A DNA stretch of 64,000 bases from Trichoplax adhaerens (GCF_000150275.1 NW_002060948.1:2989183-3053182), one strand, 5' to 3'; counted from the first letter of the stretch, positions 2,974 through 21,517 are shown. Made by a program: numbers and translations. Notes: generated by a model not told the origin, from the letters alone.

Positions 2974-4050
2974 TCAAGTCCGAGTCCAGAACAACTTACG
3001 CTTATAGTTTGACAGATTTTGAGAGATATTAAAGATGTAAATAATGGGATTAATTGTGCAGTTAACTTGAAATAATAGCAAGACATTCGGTGCGGTATCC
3101 AGAAAACGAATATTGTCGATAGATAAACGATAATTAATAAATATTGCTGTACCACAAGCAAGCGAAGGAAACCAAGCCACAAGATTAGTAATACTAATAG
3201 TGGCGGCAATTTTTAACGTTTTCCTTTCAACGTTTTGGTTGAAGGTCTTGCTAGCTTTAATTTTGGCTGCTATATGCCGTAGTTTAAGATATGTCCCCAT
3301 ATATAAGGATAATGTAAAAATATAACAAATAAACCCGATTACGCTCAAAAGTAACAGTGAAAATCTAACGAAATTAACGGATACATCTGCAAATGTACAT
3401 AAATTGCTAAACCGATAACTAATTGACTTAGCGGGTGGAAAAGTTATATAGGAAAACGCCGTAAACATACTTGCAGTGGCAATTCCAATGCTCCAACCAC
3501 CAATGGAAATCATTTTTGCTTTCTTAGGAGTTATTTCTAAGTTGTTCGAAAATGGAAATGCTACGCTAACATAGCGATCAACGGCAATAATCGTAATGAT
3601 GAAGACAGATTGAAATGAAGATAAAACATTTAGATACCTAGCTGTAAAACAGAATGGATTGCCGATCCAATCGTGATAAATATTCGATGAATTGATTAGT
3701 GACTCTGCCATACTACCATTATTGTAAGGATTAATTTGCATAAACCGATAGCGAAGATCAGCTACTGCTAAAATAAGTAAATATAATGAGCCAGCTAAAT
3801 CGGAGGCAGCTAGATTGGCTATCAGGATAATAAATGTTCGATTGCCAACGTATCTGGCTGTAAATTGGTTACTCGTAATTTCTGATTGCCGGCTATGATC
3901 AGAGCTTACTTTAGAAAAGATAGTGCGATTGCTACGTTTCTTTAGAGCCAAAATAATCTTAAAGACGTAGTAATTAGCGATTATGCCACAAACGCCAAAA
4001 CACCATGTCAAAGTGATAGCTATCGGGTTATTATAAAGAATTGATGCCAT
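2974..4050 (-). CDS. Intronless rhodopsin-class (class A) GPCR with LGR/RXFP-like 7TM and a very short N-terminus, 358 aa
   Basis: Seven hydrophobic segments; TM1 GIIAN, TM2 NLAASDLAGSLYLLILAVAD, ECL1 WIGNPFC, TM3 IAVDRY, ECL2 Cys (NLC), TM6 TNLVAWFP, TM7 NCTINPIIY. Confidence 0.92.
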   Translation of the reverse strand: MASILYNNPIAITLTWCFGVCGIIANYYVFKIILALKKRSNRTIFSKVSSDHSRQSEITSNQFTARYVGNRTFIILIANLAASDLAGSLYLLILAVADLRYRFMQINPYNNGSMAESLINSSNIYHDWIGNPFCFTARYLNVLSSFQSVFIITIIAVDRYVSVAFPFSNNLEITPKKAKMISIGGWSIGIATASMFTAFSYITFPPAKSISYRFSNLCTFADVSVNFVRFSLLLLSVIGFICYIFTLSLYMGTYLKLRHIAAKIKASKTFNQNVERKTLKIAATISITNLVAWFPSLACGTAIFINYRLSIDNIRFLDTAPNVLLLFQVNCTINPIIYIFNISQNLSNYKRKLFWTRT

Positions 4051-6071: not shown

Positions 6072-7205
6072 CTATTTATACGAATGATTATTTTTACAAT
6101 TGCCAAGTAGCCTACAGGAATGGCAAAGGTTTAATTCCGTCGTAAATGTTATCAACGTAATAGGATTTAAAACACAATTGATTTGAAATAACAAGAGTGA
6201 ATTCGTAGCAGCATTTCGAAATAGATTATTCACAAGAAATATAGGATGATAGATATAAGCAACTATGCCACAGATAAAACCAGGAAACCAAAAGAAAAAA
6301 TTTGTTGAGACGATTATCATAGCAATTTTTAAAATTTTCCATTCAGCTCGTTTACTCCCAAATTTGTGATTAGGATGTATGCTTATCGACCTTTGTCGAA
6401 TTTTATAATATATTCCAGCATAAACCACCAATATGACTGTGTAGACAAGTATACCAATTATTAAAAATAGCAATACCAATAACCTCACTTCGTAATCTGC
6501 ATAGTCCTCGAAACTGCACAAGTTATGGTAATCATAACTAGGCGCAGGGGCTGGAGGAAATGTAATATAAGCAGCTACAGTAAATGTTGTACCAACACTC
6601 ATCGCTATTAACCATCCCAATAAACATAGGAACTTCGCTCGTCTTTGTGTTAATTTCAAGATTGCTGAGAATGGATAAGCAACGCTAATGTAACGATCGA
6701 TGGCAACAAGCATCATGATATAAGCGGATTGAAAAATAGATACACAATTTATAAATCTTGCTATATAGCAAAATGGATTACTAATCCAATTTAAATAACT
6801 GACTGAAGAATCTGTAAAATGAGTCTGATTGTGTTTATCATGAGCTAATCTGTGATGGAGATCGGCTGAAGCAATAATTATCAAATACATTGACCCGAGC
6901 AAATCAGAGCCAGCGAGATTAATAAGTAGAATCGTAAATGTTCGATTAATGGTTGTTTTAGTTGGCTTAACAGTTTGATTAAAACGCAATAACTGCCCGT
7001 GACGATATATTGAACGAGAAATAATAGCTCGAACACGCTGTAGAGTTGGAGAATGTAAAAACTTAAGTAAAACCATATTAGCAATGATACCCGCTAGGCC
7101 AAATATCCATGATATTAATATTACTGACAGGTCGTTTTCGATTCTGATAGTCACTGACATATTGAATGCGGCTATCGGCGACAGCTTTAGTTTTGATTCA
7201 GTCAT
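6072..7205 (-). CDS. Intronless rhodopsin-class GPCR, tandem paralog of 2974..4050, 377 aa (start may be the Met at 7160)
   Basis: GIIAN, NLAGSDLLGSMYLIIIASAD, WISNPFC, VAIDRY, TNFFFWFP, NCVLNP. Shares blocks such as YITFPPA and LLLFQ.NC with the neighbouring GPCR. A minus-strand polypyrimidine/AG acceptor near 7411 suggests a 5'UTR intron. Confidence 0.92.
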   Translation of the reverse strand: MTESKLKLSPIAAFNMSVTIRIENDLSVILISWIFGLAGIIANMVLLKFLHSPTLQRVRAIISRSIYRHGQLLRFNQTVKPTKTTINRTFTILLINLAGSDLLGSMYLIIIASADLHHRLAHDKHNQTHFTDSSVSYLNWISNPFCYIARFINCVSIFQSAYIMMLVAIDRYISVAYPFSAILKLTQRRAKFLCLLGWLIAMSVGTTFTVAAYITFPPAPAPSYDYHNLCSFEDYADYEVRLLVLLFLIIGILVYTVILVVYAGIYYKIRQRSISIHPNHKFGSKRAEWKILKIAMIIVSTNFFFWFPGFICGIVAYIYHPIFLVNNLFRNAATNSLLLFQINCVLNPITLITFTTELNLCHSCRLLGNCKNNHSYK

Positions 7206-12642: not shown

Positions 12643-15600
12643 CTACAAATTCGAAACATCCATTTCATCAGAAGTCAACTTCATTTTTTTACCAATGGCT
12701 ATATTTCTTCTTATTGCAAGACAAATCATATTATTCCCCAAATAATAATTGGATGTAACGATATTCATCTGAACTTTGTTCAGCTCATTAGATAACCAAT
12801 CATCGATTTTAGGATTGATTTTATTACTTAGAGTTTGAATACTAAAAGGAATTTGGTTATTAGTTGCATCAAATGTTGTAAACTCTGAAATAGAAAGACT
12901 TTTGTTATCAGTACGATAATAATCTTTAAAATGGATAAATAGTTTCTTTTCTCTTTCAATTAGAATTATTGGTTTAACTGAGTGTATTGGACCCCAAACC
13001 AAGTCACTGTCTTGATACTTTGAACTACAATTTATTTTATTGTACGATGTAAGGATTCGTGTGTTATCTTTCCAAAGCGTTGCCAATACCTTGCCTGCGT
13101 AGGATTTTGGCATCGCATATCCTTTCAACTTGTCCAATATAACATCTAACAGATTATCGTGGATCGTATCTTCATCAAAATCATAAAAATCTACAAAATG
13201 TATGATTAATACCTCATTTATATTTCTTGCGGCAAATGTCTTAATCGTGTGTAGAAATGATGTTACTGAAATTTTCGAAAGCCATTTGTTATGACTAAGC
13301 CAAAATTTTGTCTTAAACGATGGCAAATATCTTACTCGTAAATCAAAATAACGTATTCCATCACGTAATTGATTCGCTATATTTTCTGTTTGAGTTTGCG
13401 ACCATGGTGTCAGCATCGGAGCCGACATATTATAACAGGCTGAACAATAAGTTCCAGGAATGACCAGATCTTGCAGTCGTAAATTTTGCAAAGAATGTTT
13501 ATATTTAGCCATCCAATTAGTAAAATTGTGAAATTTAGCTACTTCACTTATCATAAATCTTGCTTCTTTGGAGCTGTAGGTAATATATGCTACGTAATAG
13601 TGTCGATTACGTGCAAACTCTACTACAGTATTGCAAGAATTATTATAATTTGCTACCCAACACCACTGCCCTTGAATATAATTACTTACATTCCTTGGAT
13701 AATGGCGATAAATAGCTACATAGTCCCATGTCAATGCCTTATCACCACGAAACCATTTTAGATCAAATGTTAAGCTTTTATCAATTCCATACTTAAAAGT
13801 ATACTGGCCGGATGCAGTTAGGTAAGGATTATGCCGATATCGTGTAACGTTATGAATTCGCTTCGTATTTTCCATGTTTACCTCTATCGGAGGGATTAAC
13901 GGATGAGGTCTTTGGGCATAGCCGTAACCATCATCTTCTGGAGTTAATGAAGGTGAGACAGTTTTGAATGATTCAAATTCTTTGATTAAAAATCCACATA
14001 CCTTGGTTTTATTACACGAGTATGTATAATACACGATATAGTAAGTGTAATCCTTGTCGTAACCTAAATTCGTTACAATTCTATCGGAGAGACGCATATT
14101 TAGCCAATGCTGATAACACGATTGGTAAATTGCTTCGCTCTTTTTCTTGCATAATATGGCAATGTAATCATACGCGTTAGGCATAACACCAGCTACCCAC
14201 GAAATTATAATGTAAGTGTTATTATACGGCATCGCCCATCTTTGCAATCGCATTTTCAGTTTGACATAACTTTTTTTCATTGCTGTTCGATTTAATTCCG
14301 CAGGTTGAAACTTTTGTATTAGTACTTTCAGTGCTACTGGATTTATATTAGCTAATAGTCTTGTCTTCATCGCAGGAATTAGATTTATGTTCGCGATTTC
14401 AGGGTCTGTTATGCTTGCGTTGTAATAAAATGAATAAAAATTTATTATAGGGTTATTTCCGGCATAGATAAGTAACTCCAATTGCTTATATTTGTTGGTT
14501 GTCATTATTGTTATAGACGGCTTCGGTTGCAAAGTGAATTCTAGATTGTATAAAATGGTCATCTACTAAGTTATGTACACTGCAATCATACAAATGAAAA
14601 TTACTAATCGCTCGAGTATATTAATATATCATAACGTTATTATTAATAAAAGACAGCAATTACGGGTAAACTAAGTGATAACCCAAAATGTTTTATCTTA
14701 CTTGTAGTTTGGTGACCACGCAGCGCTACGATATAATAATCATTATTATCCTCTTTGACAATATATCCTGGGAAATGGAACTTATCGGTACCGATGGCAT
14801 CCTTCATAATATAAACAATGCGATATGAGTATTTCTTTTTAATGTAACTACTGGTTACTACTCAAACAGGTTCCATGCTTACTTGAGATAATTTCGGAGT
14901 AAACGTTTTCCAAGTCTTCCAGTTAAATATCTTTCCAGAGGGAGAATCACCCTCTAGCCCAAAGATATCTTTCGATCCTAGCTTAGATGACAATTGCACT
15001 AAGTCATTCTCAAAAATAAATCCACCTGTAGAGGTATCAAACCTAAGGACCAATAATATGCAATACATATTTTAATAACATATAAAAAGATGCAGCCTAT
15101 ATTTATAGTTCCTACATATATCTACATATCTTCCTCGCTGTAATGCATAATTAATCTGACGCACATTGCTTTACCGGTCGACCTTCGTATAACCTTTAAT
15201 GCAAACGGGTTATGATTACAATAGATGTAAAAGTCTCCCGCACCATAATTATTGCTAGGTTGTTTCGAGAAATTGGATGGATAATATCGAGGGTCATAAA
15301 ACTAAAATTCGTAATAAGGCCAATAAGATCAATCAGTGACTGATTGTACAATAAAGGATGCTTTATTGTATATGTAGAAAGGACACATTTTGAGCGCCGT
15401 TGTAATAAGAGCACGACGTATCTTATTTCACTACGTAACATCTTAAGTTACCTTAATCGATAGCATTGCTGGACGATAATGTTCGATAGTAACCATGATA
15501 TCAGTTAATGCCTTGCTGCTGTAATAAGGAGTATCACAACGGCGTAACTTTGCAATGAAATCTTTACTAGTTATTTCAGTGCGATTACGAATTTGATATC

Positions 15601-15973
15601 CGTAATTAACCGGAAAATAGCATGATGGAACAGCATTGCCGCTTGAAGCTCCCCAACAACATCCCCGTTCCTTGCATCCTTTCTCTGTTGCTAGCCCAAC
15701 CGGGTAGCAATCAATTCTATCTTCCACGTCATCACTGCAAACTACATCGTTTTTACCGCAAACAAATTTTGCAGTGGTAGAAGAAGGAGACGTTATGATC
15801 CCAGCAGTAGTTACAGTTTTAGGTAATAGCTTTGGTGTATCAATTTTTTCATGATGATTCGAGTGTGAAATAATTTGCAGATTGGACCGATTGATGTGAT
15901 ATATAATTACCAACGTTGCTATAATTACAATTACTAAAGGCACTATTCGTTTACGTCCATGGCCGGTAAACAT
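12643..15973 (-). CDS. Chimeric type II membrane protein (~938 aa): TM anchor, Thr/Ser stalk, trefoil (P-type) domain, GH31 N-terminal beta-sandwich, 2x SKICH-like domain, PI-PLC X (PLCXD-like) domain
   Basis: Exons 15973-15452, 15301-15165, 15042-14883, 14801-14702 and 14540-12643; all introns GT-AG with phases 0/2/0/1 giving one open frame. Trefoil RIDCYP...CKERGCCW...VPSCYFP. GH31-N motifs IK|FYDP, NPFALKVIRRSTG, FDTSTGGFIFENDLVQLS, IFGLEG, FTLQPKPSIT. PLC-X motifs NWM...LQDLVIPGT, QTQ..IANQLRDGIRYFDLRV, NEVLII, NIVTSNY. Confidence 0.82.
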
Positions 15974-17574
15974 GATCAATCCAAGCCAAATGAGCTACAT
16001 TTGTATATTATTAAAAAGGCAAGAAGTATTATGATTAGAGTTGCTAACCTAGTTATCATGATAAACAGGACGTAAACATAAAGTATCCTATTTAAAATTT
16101 AGCAGAATTGAAAAGTCGAAAGCACGAAAGATCTCGTTTAAAACGGCTTTACTGTATTGATTTCTATACATCCGCGATATTATATGATGTGTATGAAGTC
16201 AGGTCTAACTATAGTCTTATGTTTTTACTGATTAGGATACATATAAGCTAGATATTCCAGAACAGGCTAACAAGGTAAAGGATATTCGTTTTTGTATTAA
16301 TCTTTTAAGCGACCTTAAAACTAATTAACTATAATGGACTATAGTTCAACTGATATCCAACGAAGCCTAGCTCGTACATTATTATCAAATTATAGGAAAC
16401 GATTAAAACGATAAAATAATAACGTAATAGTTTATTAGCAAATAATCTTCAGGTACGGTTGAGTTTATTGGTTAGTAGATGCGAAATCTGTTATATCCTC
16501 ATCGAGAGGCACAATACCTTACCGTCAATTAAATTTCGAAATACCGATGATCTAAAGTAAATAAAATAGTCCAATCAAGCAGGACGTAATTTTTCTTAAG
16601 AATCAAATTTTACAGCTAAACCTGTATTTTGACCTAGGAAGCAAGAATTTAATTAATTAATTTAGTCTAATAAAAGTTCCATAGCATTCATTGATACATT
16701 TAAGAATTCGCTATTAATAATGTTATGTTATTAATTAATTACAGCAAATTGTTCTTCAAAATCCTAAAATGAATTTCCTTTAACAGTACGACAGCGTAAT
16801 GTATGCTCAAAAACAAGTATCAAATGTATGCGGCCTTGGCTGTAAATCATTTTAATAATAGTAGATAATTATAATGATTTCGTCTGATTGATGATAAACA
16901 TGTGTGTCCGCAAAAATGGCATAGCTAGTCTGGTACTATAATTCGTTAGTGAACTTTAGAAATCTTAACGATTATTAAAAATATTGCAAGTCTTGGGTAT
17001 TTACCTGGTACCCTTTGACTCTTCAAATTAAGGAAAATAAGATTGAATTAAATCAACTACTGTATGTGCAGTAAAGTACAGTGTCATCATTGTATTGCAC
17101 AATTCATACGTGGTAAAGTAGCAATGGAACAATGTCGCGCCATCTTATTACAGTATCGTGTAAAATAGATGCCCAAAAACAGATTGATGATTTCTGTCTG
17201 AATAATAATAAAAACTGTTTATGATTAACTGTTATTTCATCCTTTACGCAAAATTAATCAATCCACCATACGTACGTTACGTAAGTAGATCTTAGCTACG
17301 AATAAATCGAAAAACTGTACGCATATTTATTCTATGTTATTTGCTATAAAGCTTGTAGATTGCCTTTTCGAGTTTACTGTTCAAGTGTAAATTAATGTAA
17401 CAACTTTTTGAGTTGTTGCGAGATAGCCATCATCCGGTATCCACTGTTGGTAGTTTTAAAGTGATAAAGAAAAAATTAACATATTAATCTCCCTACCTAT
17501 TCGTCATTCTCGGTAGTTAGTTTAGGTATCTGCAATACCGTGCCAAAATTAGATTATGCTTGTACAGTAGGTTC

Positions 17575-20335: not shown

Positions 20336-21517
20336 ATGGAATCGCCAGTAAACTCTAATTTGATTTCATTGCCGGCAGAGGTTATATGCCGTATTATAAG
20401 TCATGTTCCGGTCGAATGTCATCCTTCAGTTTCATTAACCTGTCGCTACATGCGAGAATGCTCTCATGTTGATCGTTTATGGCTACAACGATGTCGTGAT
20501 GAATACAACGTTGACGATTACCGAAGTTGGAAAGGCGTTTCATCGTATTATCAATTATATTCCAAGATATTATATAGGTATGGGCCTCTTCTAGGAGTCT
20601 GGTTACGTCGAATGGGTTGCTATGGAGGGCTTATATCAATTAAAATTCGAGATGGTCAAATATTCGGTGAAGAATACGTCGTAAATCCCGACGAACGATC
20701 AGCTGACAAAATTAACGTTGTCTGTCGACCAGTCTTTGCTATCACTACGACCGAAAACGAGGACTGTATCGTAGAATGTCATACTCTACTTAGTGAAAGC
20801 CATCGCGCCAACATTGATATGAAAATATTTAAAAATGGTCTAGTTGATAAATTTAAGCTAAATTGTGATGCGAAGTATCGCCATATTCCTTTAGAAAACA
20901 ATGATTTACAATTTCTCTTCGACTCATTATATCGACTGTGGGCTCAAGGTGAACTTGGAGCTAATTATACAAATGACACATTCGTTAATGAGGTTATCGG
21001 TATAAAATTTTGGACTTATCTGTCATGGAGTCATGGATTTACATTTACTAGGCTTCCGCCAATCAATCATAGCAATGTTGATACAAACATATCAAAGAAT
21101 CACTTACGATCTGGATATTACGCCGGTACTTATGGAGTCCATGGACTAGAAATTATTCGGATCCTGTACAAGGAGCAAACACTTAATGGAACTAAAATAA
21201 CAGGCGATCCTAACGTGCCTGCTGGCAAGATCACTTTCAAAGCATTTTTAAGTAATCCTATCCTAATAGCCAATCCTGAAGATGGCCCATTCTTACTAAC
21301 TGACGACCTATTACCATCGATTAATGGCATACCTCGCCATGCATTAGCTATCTACCACGGTAGCGGACAAATCGCTTTTGAAGGGTACAGATTACCAAGA
21401 TTTATTAATGGAAAATTTATTGTATTCAATCAAGATACGTGTGGATTTATTTGGTTGGGAGCTGTCATTTCCTTTACTTTATTCAAGCGTTTTGATGAAG
21501 GATTTCTCAATGTATAG
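20336..21517 (+). CDS. FBXO31: F-box only protein 31 homolog, single coding exon, 393 aa
   Basis: N-terminal F-box LISLPAEVICRIISHV...VSLTCRYMRE; YxKILYRYGPLLGVW, YGGL; C-terminal substrate-binding motifs GTYGVHGLEII, GTKITGDPNVPAG and GSGQIA..GY, typical of FBXO31. Confidence 0.93.
   Translation: MESPVNSNLISLPAEVICRIISHVPVECHPSVSLTCRYMRECSHVDRLWLQRCRDEYNVDDYRSWKGVSSYYQLYSKILYRYGPLLGVWLRRMGCYGGLISIKIRDGQIFGEEYVVNPDERSADKINVVCRPVFAITTTENEDCIVECHTLLSESHRANIDMKIFKNGLVDKFKLNCDAKYRHIPLENNDLQFLFDSLYRLWAQGELGANYTNDTFVNEVIGIKFWTYLSWSHGFTFTRLPPINHSNVDTNISKNHLRSGYYAGTYGVHGLEIIRILYKEQTLNGTKITGDPNVPAGKITFKAFLSNPILIANPEDGPFLLTDDLLPSINGIPRHALAIYHGSGQIAFEGYRLPRFINGKFIVFNQDTCGFIWLGAVISFTLFKRFDEGFLNV

What the first reader, a model, noticed from the sequence alone, without database searches (positions are those of the whole stretch)
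12643..15973. Chimeric gene: alpha-glucosidase (GH31) N-terminal half fused to a phospholipase-C X domain in place of the glycosidase barrel
Seen: three ORF-track fragments (15443..15979, 14862..15068, 12643..14562) plus two unlisted small exons join through four canonical GT-AG introns into one ~938-aa frame. The first ~360 aa follow the sucrase-isomaltase/MGAM/GAA layout: N-terminal TM anchor, Thr/Ser stalk, trefoil, then the N-terminal beta-sandwich through FTLQPKPSITIMTT...LELLIYAGNNP (compare GAA VVLQPSPALSWRST...LDVYIFLGPEP). Established: in GH31 enzymes the catalytic (beta/alpha)8 barrel (PPYW..GF...W.DMNE) starts right after this point. Here it is absent, and the same exon continues into two SKICH-like domains and a PI-PLC X barrel. 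Inference: a TIM-barrel swap has produced a membrane-anchored lumenal or cell-surface protein with a glucosidase targeting scaffold and a phosphoinositide/GPI-recognising barrel. I know of no described protein with this architecture.
Basis: partly seen in the sequence, partly recalled or inferred. Interest (0 to 1): 0.93.

Follow-up and report, generated by a model that had tools for sequence, protein, structure and literature searches.

The report
Glucosidase front end, dead phospholipase back
A Trichoplax gene really does join the membrane anchor, trefoil and N-terminal domain of an intestinal-type alpha-glucosidase to a bacterial-type PI-phospholipase-C module that has lost its catalytic residues; the gene model is already public but undescribed, and a sister gene carries the same module behind an aminopeptidase front end.

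Summary
On the minus strand, five exons joined by four GT-AG introns encode 938 aa. Exon by exon they equal a public protein, TRIADDRAFT_57436 / UniProt B3RZF6, which is RDD39580.1 in Trichoplax sp. H2 ("sucrase-isomaltase"). I found no paper that discusses it.

- **Front half:** residues 77-337 match sucrase-isomaltase and MGAM (E 1e-29 to 1e-56). The match stops at the border between the N-domain and the catalytic barrel, and there is no GH31 catalytic hit.
- **Back half:** the same exon continues into two Ig/FN3-like sandwiches and a bacterial-type PI-PLC barrel (Z 24.6). "SKICH-like" is not specifically supported.
- **Origin:** the front half keeps the intron positions of Trichoplax GH31 paralogues. 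The fusion lies where those paralogues splice to their first catalytic exon.
- **Cassette:** the back half is a single-exon module with two paralogues. One stands alone. The other sits behind an M1-aminopeptidase anchor and N-domain; this scan had already noted that chimera on other DNA of this genome (s1-800995).
- **Active site:** the GH31-fused lineage alone lost the His32, Asp33 and Asp274 equivalents (Y671, C672, N904), as s1-805237 noted for the histidine. The ORF, tail and linker are conserved at about 60% identity in a second lineage.

My best reading is a type II surface pseudo-PI-PLC. No RNA evidence could be obtained. It is a new variant of known kinds, of moderate interest.

The parts
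15452..15973 (-). Exon 1 (residues 1-174): start codon, cytoplasmic MFTGHGRKR, signal anchor, Ser/Thr stalk, trefoil, and the first strands of the GH31 N-domain
   Evidence: Sequence read. The translation equals P0001 residues 1-174. The exon end matches the exon ends of GH31 paralogues.
15890..15946 (-). Transmembrane signal anchor, residues 10-28
   Evidence: Kyte-Doolittle 19-residue mean of 2.49, the only such segment in the protein, preceded by GRKR.
15611..15739 (-). Trefoil (P-type) domain, residues 79-121, with six cysteines
   Evidence: Pfam PF00088, E 5.6e-11, profile positions 1-43 of 43. Cysteine positions.
15165..15301 (-). Exon 2 (residues 175-220, with the last codon split), GH31 N-domain
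   Evidence: The split codon ..GKAM|FDTS.. is at the same place as ..GAAM|FDTS.. in the GH31 paralogue on L021.
14883..15042 (-). Exon 3 (residues 220-273), GH31 N-domain
   Evidence: 49% identical to the matching exon of the paralogue at C1409:2.877 Mb.
14702..14801 (-). Exon 4 (residues 274-307, with the last codon split), GH31 N-domain
   Evidence: Aligned to MGAM, SI and GAA.
12643..14540 (-). Exon 5 (residues 307-938 plus the TAG stop): GH31 N-domain tail, linker, two sandwiches and the PI-PLC-type barrel in one ORF
   Evidence: The acceptor has the same position and phase as in the GH31 paralogue exon.
14449..14540 (-). Last strands of the GH31 N-domain (residues 308-337, FTLQPKPS...LELLIYAGNNP)
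   Evidence: Inside the alignments to MGAM, SI and GAA, which end at residue 337. 63% identical in P0002.
14371..14448 (-). Fusion junction and linker (residues 338-363). GH31 paralogues have a 5' splice site here. M364 aligns with the start Met of the free-standing paralogues.
   Evidence: The paralogue exon ends ..NPEAVVENYLS|GTAAGT. The DNA alignment puts GCAAGC opposite that GTAAGT. The linker is 58% identical in P0002. Family alignment.
13936..14265 (-). Ig/FN3-like beta-sandwich 1 (residues 399-508), with four Cys shared by P0001 and P0002, three of them specific to this lineage
   Evidence: AF2 models (pLDDT 90.8). Fold searches. Cysteine columns.
13534..13824 (-). Ig/FN3-like beta-sandwich 2 (residues 546-642). 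It is homologous to the single sandwich that precedes PLCX in the non-placozoan relatives; those that carry a name are arthropod.
12646..13521 (-). Bacterial-type PI-PLC (PLCXD-type) barrel, residues 647-938
   Evidence: Pfam PF00388 at 28.8 bits, over the cut-off. phmmer against S. aureus and B. cereus PI-PLC, E 1e-7 to 1e-9. Foldseek E 2e-11. VIA Z 24.6 and 23.4.
13444..13449 (-). Y671-C672 in place of the catalytic His-Asp (IPGTH-D/N becomes IPGTYC), creating C672-S-A-C675
   Evidence: Aligned to IPGSHDS of S. aureus PI-PLC. This column is His in 75 of 77 aligned homologues and Tyr only here and in P0002.
12748..12750 (-). N904 in place of the family-invariant Asp (SDFY becomes SNYY), at the position equivalent to Asp274 of B. 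cereus PI-PLC
   Evidence: This column is Asp in 100% of the non-placozoan rows and in the other four placozoan rows, and Asn only in P0001 and P0002. The equivalence to Asp274 is inferred from the end-anchored structural alignment ranges.
13291..13353 (-). Retained phosphate-site residues: R703, D706 and R708 (GIRYFDLR) and H723 (the His82 equivalent)

Best explanation
The locus is one real gene, TRIADDRAFT_57436. It encodes a 938-aa single-pass type II membrane protein.

**Domain order**
- Short cytoplasmic tail and signal anchor (residues 10-28).
- Ser/Thr stalk.
- Trefoil (79-121).
- Complete GH31 N-terminal beta-sandwich (to residue 337).
- A linker of about 60 residues.
- Two Ig/FN3-like sandwiches.
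- A bacterial-type PI-PLC (PLCXD-type) barrel.

**Origin: partly shown, partly inferred**
- Shown: the front half comes from a DNA-level copy of a GH31 gene, because it keeps the same intron positions and phases as the paralogues.
- Shown: where GH31 paralogues splice to the first catalytic exon, this exon runs on in frame into a single-exon, three-domain cassette.
- Shown: that cassette also exists free-standing (TRIADDRAFT_57375) and behind an M1-aminopeptidase anchor and N-domain (TRIADDRAFT_57039).
- Inferred: loss of the splice donor (GTAAGT to GCAAGC) extended the exon into the cassette.

**Function: inferred**
- The bulk of the protein faces the outside or the lumen, as in sucrase-isomaltase and as in the signal-peptide-bearing relatives of the cassette.
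- The barrel cannot carry out the canonical PI-PLC reaction. The general-base His and both partner Asp residues are replaced (Y671, C672, N904).
- The phosphate-site Arg and His (R703, H723) are kept.
- The most likely role is therefore a non-catalytic, ligand-binding ectodomain: a pseudo-PI-PLC that may bind inositol-phosphate or GPI-type groups, held out from the membrane on a glucosidase-type stalk and trefoil.
- It has been kept under constraint since before two placozoan lineages split.
For: **Gene model**
- Exon pieces, phases and splice sites were read directly.
- The identical 938-aa model carries T. adhaerens and Trichoplax sp. H2 accessions.

**Domains**
- Front-half homology ends at the domain border, and there is no GH31 catalytic hit.
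- The AF2 model of the exon-5 product has pLDDT 83 and pTM 0.83.
- The barrel scores Z 24.6 and 23.4 against Listeria and B. cereus PI-PLC.
- The sandwich pair models at pLDDT 90.8, with FN3/Ig-like matches.

**The fusion does not depend on splicing**
- The GH31 tail (308-337) and the cassette share one ORF.
- Tail and linker are 63% and 58% identical in P0002, about the same as the rest of the protein (57-71%).

**Shared gene structure with GH31 paralogues**
- Intron positions are shared with the paralogue at C1409:2.873-2.887 Mb and with the C1410 cluster.
- Many paralogues have a separate exon of about 38 aa that starts at PF01055 position 1.
- The paralogue's donor GTAAGT aligns with GCAAGC in the fused exon.

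**Cassette paralogues**
- Located.
- The M1 chimera was verified by transitive homology: P0160 residues 14-203 match the neighbouring gene's exon at E 1e-18, and that exon hits PF17900 at E 1.5e-9.

**Active-site losses**
- H671Y, D672C and D904N, plus D754H and W829K, occur only in P0001 and P0002.

**Evolutionary pattern**
- The tree has three clades, each holding T. adhaerens and a second lineage, all at 100% support.
- The GH31-fused clade has a long stem (1.24 against 0.25-0.32) but ordinary tips.

**Topology**
- Hydropathy and flanking charge.
- Relatives of the cassette begin with signal-like N-termini.
Against: - There is no transcript or protein evidence.
- Exons 1-4 could not be checked in the second lineage. 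P0002 is an ORF call that starts inside exon 5, and the exon-1 search found nothing.
- Loss of activity is inferred from residues, not measured.
- The free-standing paralogue has no signal sequence as annotated, so the native compartment of the cassette in placozoans is not settled.
- N-glycosylation sequons are only mildly above what the composition predicts (10 against 5.6).
- The splice-donor decay rests on a short DNA alignment between paralogues that are only 35-49% identical as protein.
Confidence: 0.6

Rival explanations
1. The same chimeric membrane protein, but the barrel is still an enzyme with altered chemistry or substrate. For example, it could be a phosphodiesterase that uses H723 and R703 with Tyr671 or the new C672-x-x-C675 pair, or one that acts on a different phosphoglycan or lipid.
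For: R703, D706, R708 and H723, and most of the family's near-invariant residues, are retained. The replacements Y671, C672, H754, K829 and N904 are themselves conserved between P0001 and P0002. That pattern fits a re-tooled site as well as a dead one. A long stem branch followed by ordinary tip branches fits a shift in function.
Against: The general-base His, its partner Asp and the Asp next to it are all replaced together. The first column is His in 75 of 77 homologues and the last is Asp in all others. From my own knowledge of B. cereus PI-PLC, single His32 or Asp274 mutants lose several orders of magnitude of activity; the structures of those mutants appear. No known PI-PLC-fold enzyme uses Tyr at this position, to my knowledge.
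Confidence: 0.17
2. The model is an annotation artefact. The glucosidase-like exons 1-4 would be a leftover of a truncated GH31 duplicate, and the expressed gene would be only the cassette, translated from M364 or a nearby start, like the free-standing paralogue.
For: M364 aligns with the start Met of the free-standing paralogues. No RNA evidence could be obtained. The P0002 gene call starts inside exon 5.
Against: The ORF runs 56 codons upstream of M364 to a splice acceptor with the same position and phase as in GH31 paralogues. That upstream stretch is 58-63% identical at protein level in a lineage that is 62% identical overall, so it is as constrained as the rest. All four introns have intact GT-AG sites, and all exons keep an open frame in an AT-rich genome. 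The six trefoil cysteines are intact. The same 938-aa model carries both T. adhaerens and Trichoplax sp. H2 accessions.
Confidence: 0.1
3. The gene is transcribed but functionally decaying. It would be a chimera without a role, drifting after the loss of catalysis.
For: Catalytic residues are lost. Divergence between the two lineages is the highest of the three cassette clades (62% identity against 68% and 78%).
Against: A 631-codon open exon is kept in both lineages in roughly 34% GC DNA. Tip branches are only 1.2-2.6 times those of the sister clades, while the stem is 4-5 times longer. That indicates an early burst of change followed by constraint. The lineage-specific cysteines and replacement residues are conserved between the two lineages.
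Confidence: 0.08

Closest known systems
Sucrase-isomaltase / maltase-glucoamylase / lysosomal alpha-glucosidase (GH31)
   Same: Type II signal anchor, Ser/Thr stalk, trefoil and the whole N-terminal beta-sandwich (E 1e-29 to 1e-56). Same intron positions as Trichoplax's own GH31 genes.
   Different: It lacks the catalytic (beta/alpha)8 barrel and both C-terminal domains, with no PF01055 hit. It cannot be a glycosidase, and the NCBI name 'sucrase-isomaltase' is misleading.
Bacterial PI-PLC and animal PLCXD proteins (PI-PLC X domain only)
   Same: Barrel fold (Z 24.6 and 23.4). PF00388 scores over the cut-off. The Arg69 and His82 equivalents are kept.
   Different: The His32, Asp33 and Asp274 equivalents are replaced (Y671, C672, N904). 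The barrel is preceded by two Ig-like sandwiches and a glucosidase front end, and the protein is membrane-anchored.
TRIADDRAFT_57039 / RDD44880.1 (same genome, C1409:111025-114896)
   Same: The same three-domain single-exon cassette (38% identity). It also sits behind a type II anchor plus the non-catalytic N-terminal domain of a digestive-type ectoenzyme, again without that enzyme's catalytic domain. It is also conserved in a second lineage.
   Different: The front end comes from an M1 aminopeptidase, and the gene lies inside an M1 tandem cluster. The catalytic His and Asp residues are intact (LPGTHDS, SDFY). The cassette exon is reached by splicing rather than by read-through.
Signal-peptide-bearing 'PI-PLC X domain-containing protein 1/3-like' proteins (~430-450 aa), arthropod where a name is given
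   Same: One Ig-like sandwich plus a PLCX barrel, homologous to sandwich 2 plus the barrel here. Their N-terminal signal-like segments imply an extracellular location.
   Different: They are soluble, have a single sandwich, keep the catalytic residues and have no glucosidase module. Their function is uncharacterised as far as I could find.
PLC-related catalytically inactive proteins (PRIP / PLCL1), recalled from memory and not tested here
   Same: A precedent for a PLC-fold protein that has lost catalysis and acts by binding.
   Different: They are cytosolic, with a full PH-EF-X-Y-C2 architecture, and are not specifically related.

Membership tests
Glycoside hydrolase family 31 (alpha-glucosidases) | Catalytic (beta/alpha)8 barrel with the nucleophile Asp in the WiDMNE-type motif (Pfam PF01055) | tested here: not met
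   No PF01055 hit at E <= 1 on the full protein. All PDB alignments stop at residue 337. The own-genome PF01055 search finds 49 matches, none in this gene.
Glycoside hydrolase family 31 (alpha-glucosidases) | N-terminal beta-sandwich domain of the SI/MGAM/GAA type, preceded by a trefoil | tested here: met
   phmmer: residues 77-337 against 3lpo at E 1.2e-29, 9kz6 at E 1.6e-56 and GAA at E 2e-12. The Pfam N-domain models themselves did not hit.
Glycoside hydrolase family 31 (alpha-glucosidases) | Gene structure shared with the genome's own GH31 genes | tested here: met
   Exon ends at residues 174/175, the GxAM|FDTS split codon, and the exon-5 acceptor phase are all shared with the paralogues on L021/L022 and L018.
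Trefoil (P-type) domain | Six-cysteine trefoil profile match | tested here: met
   PF00088 at E 5.6e-11 over profile positions 1-43 of 43. Cys at 79, 89, 100, 105, 106 and 118.
PI-PLC X domain / PLCXD / bacterial PI-PLC | Profile match over Pfam's gathering score | tested here: met
   PF00388 at 28.8 bits on the full protein and 29.6 bits on the exon-5 piece, against a cut-off of 23.1.
PI-PLC X domain / PLCXD / bacterial PI-PLC | Distorted TIM-barrel fold of bacterial PI-PLC | tested here: met
   VIA Z 24.6 (2plc_A, rmsd 3.0 A over 253 residues) and Z 23.4 (6s2a_A). Foldseek E 2e-11. These searches used an AF2 model with pLDDT over 90 across most of the barrel.
PI-PLC X domain / PLCXD / bacterial PI-PLC | General-base His (B. 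cereus His32) and the adjacent Asp33 | tested here: not met
   IPGTYCS aligns to IPGSHDS. The His column is H in 75 of 77 homologues, and Y only in this protein and P0002. The next column is D or N in 71 of 77, and C only in these two.
PI-PLC X domain / PLCXD / bacterial PI-PLC | C-terminal Asp paired with the general base (B. cereus Asp274) | tested here: not met
   The invariant Asp of the ..SDF(F/Y).. motif is Asn (N904) only in P0001 and P0002. The equivalence to Asp274 is inferred from the alignment ranges.
PI-PLC X domain / PLCXD / bacterial PI-PLC | Phosphate-binding Arg (Arg69) and general-acid His (His82) | tested here: met
   R703 is in an invariant column. H723 is in a column that is H in 76 of 77.
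PI-PLC X domain / PLCXD / bacterial PI-PLC | PI or GPI cleaving activity | not testable with these tools
   This needs a biochemical assay of the expressed ectodomain.
   No Pfam SKICH hit at E <= 1. NDP52 SKICH 7eaa_B scores Z 6.1 at rank 38, tied with many Ig/FN3-like folds, where the best overall is Z 7.2. Foldseek prefers tandem FN3 and cytokine-receptor pairs at E 4e-4.
Type II (signal-anchor) membrane proteins | A single N-terminal hydrophobic segment with positive charges on its N-terminal side and no other TM segment | tested here: met
   Kyte-Doolittle mean of 2.49 at residues 10-28, after GRKR. No dedicated topology predictor was available.

The most novel reading that the evidence does not exclude
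Placozoans may have built a small family of membrane-anchored ecto-PI-PLC-like proteins by repeatedly grafting one secreted sandwich-sandwich-barrel cassette onto the anchor and N-domain of brush-border-type digestive hydrolases: GH31 alpha-glucosidase in one case and M1 aminopeptidase in the other. The aminopeptidase-anchored copy would remain an active surface PI/GPI-phospholipase. The glucosidase-anchored copy would have become a conserved catalytically dead receptor or decoy. It would bind GPI or inositol-phosphoglycan ligands at the digestive surface, for example on prey or on the animal's own GPI-anchored enzymes, and might regulate its active sister.
Probability: 0.2. Interest if true: 0.65.

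Novelty: new variant of a known kind. Interest (0 to 1): 0.5.

Why it matters
**How new proteins are made in an early-branching animal.** This is a clean, datable example.
- An exon-boundary graft joins the non-catalytic front end of a digestive ectoenzyme to an unrelated three-domain module.
- A burst of change follows, including loss of the catalytic residues, and then long-term conservation.
- The same cassette behind a second, unrelated ectoenzyme front end suggests the graft was favoured, or is mechanistically easy, rather than a one-off accident.

**An experimental pair.** The two chimeras are natural active and inactive partners. They could be used to ask what extracellular PLCXD-type proteins do, a family with almost no functional data.

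**Annotation.** The public name "sucrase-isomaltase, intestinal" is wrong in the sense that matters. The protein has no glycosidase domain and should not be counted among placozoan digestive glucosidases.

Tried and rejected

The contig of the second-lineage orthologue P0002 could therefore not be fetched, its exons 1-4 could not be checked, and no dN/dS could be computed.
- The exon-1 protein search found nothing (length window 96-304 aa).
- The N-half region search found only the protein itself, because of the word-index limit.
- The metagenome contig scan found no relative.
- Literature: no paper contains Trichoplax with PLCXD, or with trefoil and glucosidase. None contains any accession of the protein. 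The ten papers that contain the number 57436 together with Trichoplax have unrelated titles. Nothing turned up in the placozoan secretory-cell paper or in the supplements held for the cell-atlas paper.

All full-length analyses used the database protein P0001, which I showed to be identical to each exon piece.

**Ideas rejected or left open**
- SKICH identity of the middle domains is not specifically supported.
- Barrel-for-barrel structural replacement is rejected, because of the two intervening sandwiches and the M1 chimera.
- Direct homology of the sister chimera's front end to solved M1 structures or to the Pfam model does not reach significance. It is established only through the neighbouring paralogue.
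- Remnants of GH31 catalytic exons downstream of the gene: none. There is no PF01055 match in this part of C1409, and the downstream ORFs are 7TM receptors.

**Not run**
- Complex prediction, because I make no claim that the N-domain binds the barrel.
- A full-length AF2 model, because both jobs went to the exon-5 product and the sandwich pair. The Atlas's own full-length model is poor (pLDDT 0.59).


Full report
**1. What is in the sequence**

The window is part of a 105.6-Mb, 1414-contig genome. It is G000:C1409:2989183-3053182. The proteins it encodes carry Trichoplax adhaerens accessions.

On the minus strand I read five exons: 15973-15452, 15301-15165, 15042-14883, 14801-14702 and 14540-12643. 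They are separated by GT..AG introns of 150, 122, 81 and 161 nt. The CDS is 2817 nt. If any intron were retained, a stop would follow within 2-19 codons.

Each piece was translated by reference and located in a database protein, P0001. The pieces are residues 1-174, 175-219, 221-273, 274-306 and 308-938. The split codons read ATG (M220) and AAA (K307).

P0001 is EDV24195.1 / XP_002113721.1 / TRIADDRAFT_57436 / UniProt B3RZF6 in T. adhaerens. It is also RDD39580.1 in Trichoplax sp. H2, where it is named "Sucrase-isomaltase, intestinal".

I found no paper that mentions it.

**2. Domains**

- **Signal anchor.** Residues 10-28 are the only strongly hydrophobic segment (Kyte-Doolittle mean 2.49) and follow GRKR, as a type II signal anchor would. 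A Ser/Thr/Pro-rich stalk follows.
- **Trefoil.** Pfam E 5.6e-11, with six cysteines.
- **GH31 N-domain.** Residues 77-337 align with sucrase-isomaltase (3lpo, E 1.2e-29), with both halves of full-length MGAM (9kz6, E 1.6e-56) and with GAA (E 2e-12). Every alignment ends at ..LELLIYAGNNP. That corresponds to about residue 270 of N-terminal MGAM, where the catalytic barrel begins.
- **No glycosidase domain.** There is no GH31 catalytic hit.
- **Exon-5 product.** An AF2 model (pLDDT 83, pTM 0.83) shows a poorly ordered stretch of about 90 residues (the cut-off GH31 tail, the linker and some helices), then two beta-sandwiches, then a barrel.
- **Barrel.** It is a bacterial-type PI-PLC: Foldseek E 2e-11, and VIA Z 24.6 to Listeria 2plc and Z 23.4 to B. 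cereus 6s2a. PF00388 scores above its gathering score.
- **Sandwich pair.** Modelled alone (pLDDT 90.8), it matches tandem FN3 and cytokine-receptor pairs weakly (E 4e-4). VIA gives generic Ig-like folds, with the best at Z 7.2. NDP52 SKICH appears at Z 6.1, tied with dozens of others. They are Ig/FN3-like sandwiches, and the label "SKICH-like" is not specifically supported.

**3. The fusion is real at the DNA level**

The last 30 residues of the GH31 N-domain and the whole back half lie in one exon and one ORF, so the chimera does not depend on any splice.

The same ORF is annotated in two separately named Trichoplax records. A 621-aa ORF from another lineage, P0002 (62% identical), also spans the junction. 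There, the GH31 tail is 63% identical and the linker 58%, which is within the range for the rest of the protein (57-71%). That argues against a misassembly. It also argues against the upstream part of exon 5 being untranslated.

The identities of the three orthologue pairs are 78%, 68% and 62%. These fit the Trichoplax-Hoilungia scale reported by Eitel et al. 2018, a mean protein distance of 28.3% (PMC6067683).

**4. How the gene arose**

The genome holds many GH31 genes. The front half of this gene shares several features with them:
- the exon end at residues 174/175;
- the split codon in ..G(K/A)AM|FDTS..;
- the position and phase of the exon-5 acceptor.

It therefore derives from a genomic copy of a GH31 gene and not from a retrocopy.

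In the paralogue 117 kb away (C1409:2.873-2.887 Mb), the matching exon ends nine codons after ..GDNP with a GTAAGT donor. The next exon begins the catalytic domain (..PPYWALGF..). Many paralogues have a separate exon of about 38 aa that starts at PF01055 position 1.

In the fused gene the exon simply reads on at that point. A DNA alignment places GCAAGC opposite the paralogue's GTAAGT. That is suggestive of donor loss and exon extension, but it is weak evidence.

About 26 codons later comes M364. This Met aligns with the start Met of the free-standing paralogues.

**5. The back half is a cassette, and this is not the only graft**

T. adhaerens has three copies of the module "two sandwiches plus PLCX barrel". 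All three are on C1409, and in each the module is a single exon:
- **This gene.**
- **TRIADDRAFT_57375.** It is 571 aa, has no hydrophobic N-terminus, and has no related upstream exon within 1.4 kb.
- **TRIADDRAFT_57039**, which is H2 protein RDD44880.1 (869 aa).

The third copy begins with KRRRRRE and a TM segment. Its residues 14-203 match exon 1 of the neighbouring gene at E 1e-18, and that exon hits Peptidase_M1_N at E 1.5e-9. The gene lies inside a tandem M1-aminopeptidase cluster. It keeps the catalytic residues (LPGTHDS, SDFY).

I found this before seeing that the scan had already noted it on other DNA of this genome (s1-800995).

Outside placozoans, only the last sandwich plus the barrel is recognisably conserved. 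It occurs in proteins of about 430-450 aa; those that carry a source name are arthropod "PLCXD1/3-like" proteins. Nearly all of them start with a signal-peptide-like segment.

An extracellular cassette anchored by a borrowed type II front end is therefore a coherent picture. "TIM-barrel swap" is not: the barrel lies about 300 residues beyond the GH31 N-domain, and in the sister chimera the same cassette replaces a non-barrel catalytic domain.

**6. State of the active site**

Against S. aureus PI-PLC, IPGSHDS aligns with IPGTYCS.
- Across 77 aligned homologues the His column is H in 75. It is Y only here and in P0002.
- The next column is D or N in 71, and C only in these two.
- The invariant Asp of ..SDF(F/Y).. 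is N904 only in these two. I infer that this is the position equivalent of B. cereus Asp274.
- D754H and W829K are also specific to this lineage.
- R703, D706, R708 and H723 (the Arg69 and His82 equivalents) are kept.

The lineage also gained cysteines at 437, 448 and 482, next to C488, and a C672-x-x-C675 pair.

In the family tree, each of the three placozoan clades holds T. adhaerens plus the second lineage, at 100% support. The GH31-fused clade has a stem of 1.24 substitutions per site, against 0.25-0.32 for the other two clades. Its tips (0.24 and 0.34) are close to those of the other clades (0.13-0.25). That is an early burst of change followed by constraint.

**7. Most likely function**

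Shown:
- the architecture;
- the origin at an exon boundary;
- conservation of the ORF, tail, linker and replacement residues in a second lineage;
- loss of three catalytic residues.

Inferred:
- type II orientation, with the bulk of the protein outside the cell or in the lumen;
- no canonical PI-PLC catalysis;
- a binding role (a pseudo-PI-PLC, possibly for inositol-phosphate or GPI-type ligands), displayed on a glucosidase-type stalk with a trefoil.

Rivals:
- a re-tooled enzyme (0.17);
- a gene-model artefact, with only the cassette expressed (0.10);
- a decaying gene (0.08).

**8. What could not be done**

No DNA of the second lineage could be fetched, so exons 1-4 there and dN/dS remain untested.

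**9. Verdict**

- The gene model is public but undescribed.
- The finding is a new variant of known kinds: a PLCXD-type cassette on a GH31 front end, catalytically disabled.
- Interest is moderate (0.5). It is raised somewhat by the parallel aminopeptidase graft and by the active/inactive pair that the two chimeras offer.

Noticed in passing
G000:C1409:111025-114896 (+), loci L023/L025/L027; about 2.87 Mb before the window: A sister chimera, TRIADDRAFT_57039 / RDD44880.1. It has a type II anchor and a diverged M1-aminopeptidase N-domain, followed by the same two-sandwich plus PLCX cassette with its catalytic His and Asp intact. It sits inside a tandem M1 aminopeptidase cluster. The T. adhaerens model (814 aa) lacks the anchor that the H2 model (869 aa) has.
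   Followed up: partly
window 14395-14440 (-) compared with L021:3610-3640 (-): Where the GH31 paralogue has its 5' splice site GTAAGT, the fused exon reads GCAAGC. This may be a decayed donor that turned intron into coding linker. GCAAGC could also serve as a rare GC-AG donor for an alternative isoform.
   Followed up: partly
window 13438-13449 (-): The substitution D672C creates a C-S-A-C (CxxC) motif at the former active site. It is conserved in the second lineage. It could be a disulfide, a metal site or a redox site, but this is unexplained.
   Followed up: no
G000:C1409:2521153-2522862 (+), locus L010: The free-standing cassette paralogue TRIADDRAFT_57375 has no signal sequence as annotated, although relatives of the cassette in other animals do. 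Either it is cytosolic or a 5' exon is missing from the model. The ORF is open for 23 codons upstream of the annotated Met.
   Followed up: partly
G000:C1370:34732-42308 (loci L001, L002, L013): A small contig carries GH31 sequence in very long open frames (1187, 1234 and 991 aa) with few or no introns. This is unlike the intron-rich GH31 genes on C1409 and C1410. It may be an MGAM-like tandem gene or foreign DNA.
   Followed up: no
G000:C1410:5.94-6.04 Mb: A tandem cluster of at least six or seven GH31 genes with trefoil-type first exons.
   Followed up: no
window 2974-4050 (-) and 6072-7205 (-): Two intronless rhodopsin-family 7TM receptor ORFs (358 and 377 aa; PF00001 at E 6e-23 and 7e-25) lie downstream of the gene.
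   Followed up: no
window 20336-21517 (+): An ORF of 393 aa with an F-box and a Cyclin_D1_bind domain (FBXO31-like), PF12014 at E 1e-24.
   Followed up: no
protein P0013 (573 aa, unnamed Logan contig): A compositionally very different (Asp/Glu/Arg-rich) protein from an unknown organism. It aligns over both sandwiches and the barrel (query 97-612, E 6e-24). The two-sandwich form of the cassette is therefore not strictly limited to placozoans.
   Followed up: no
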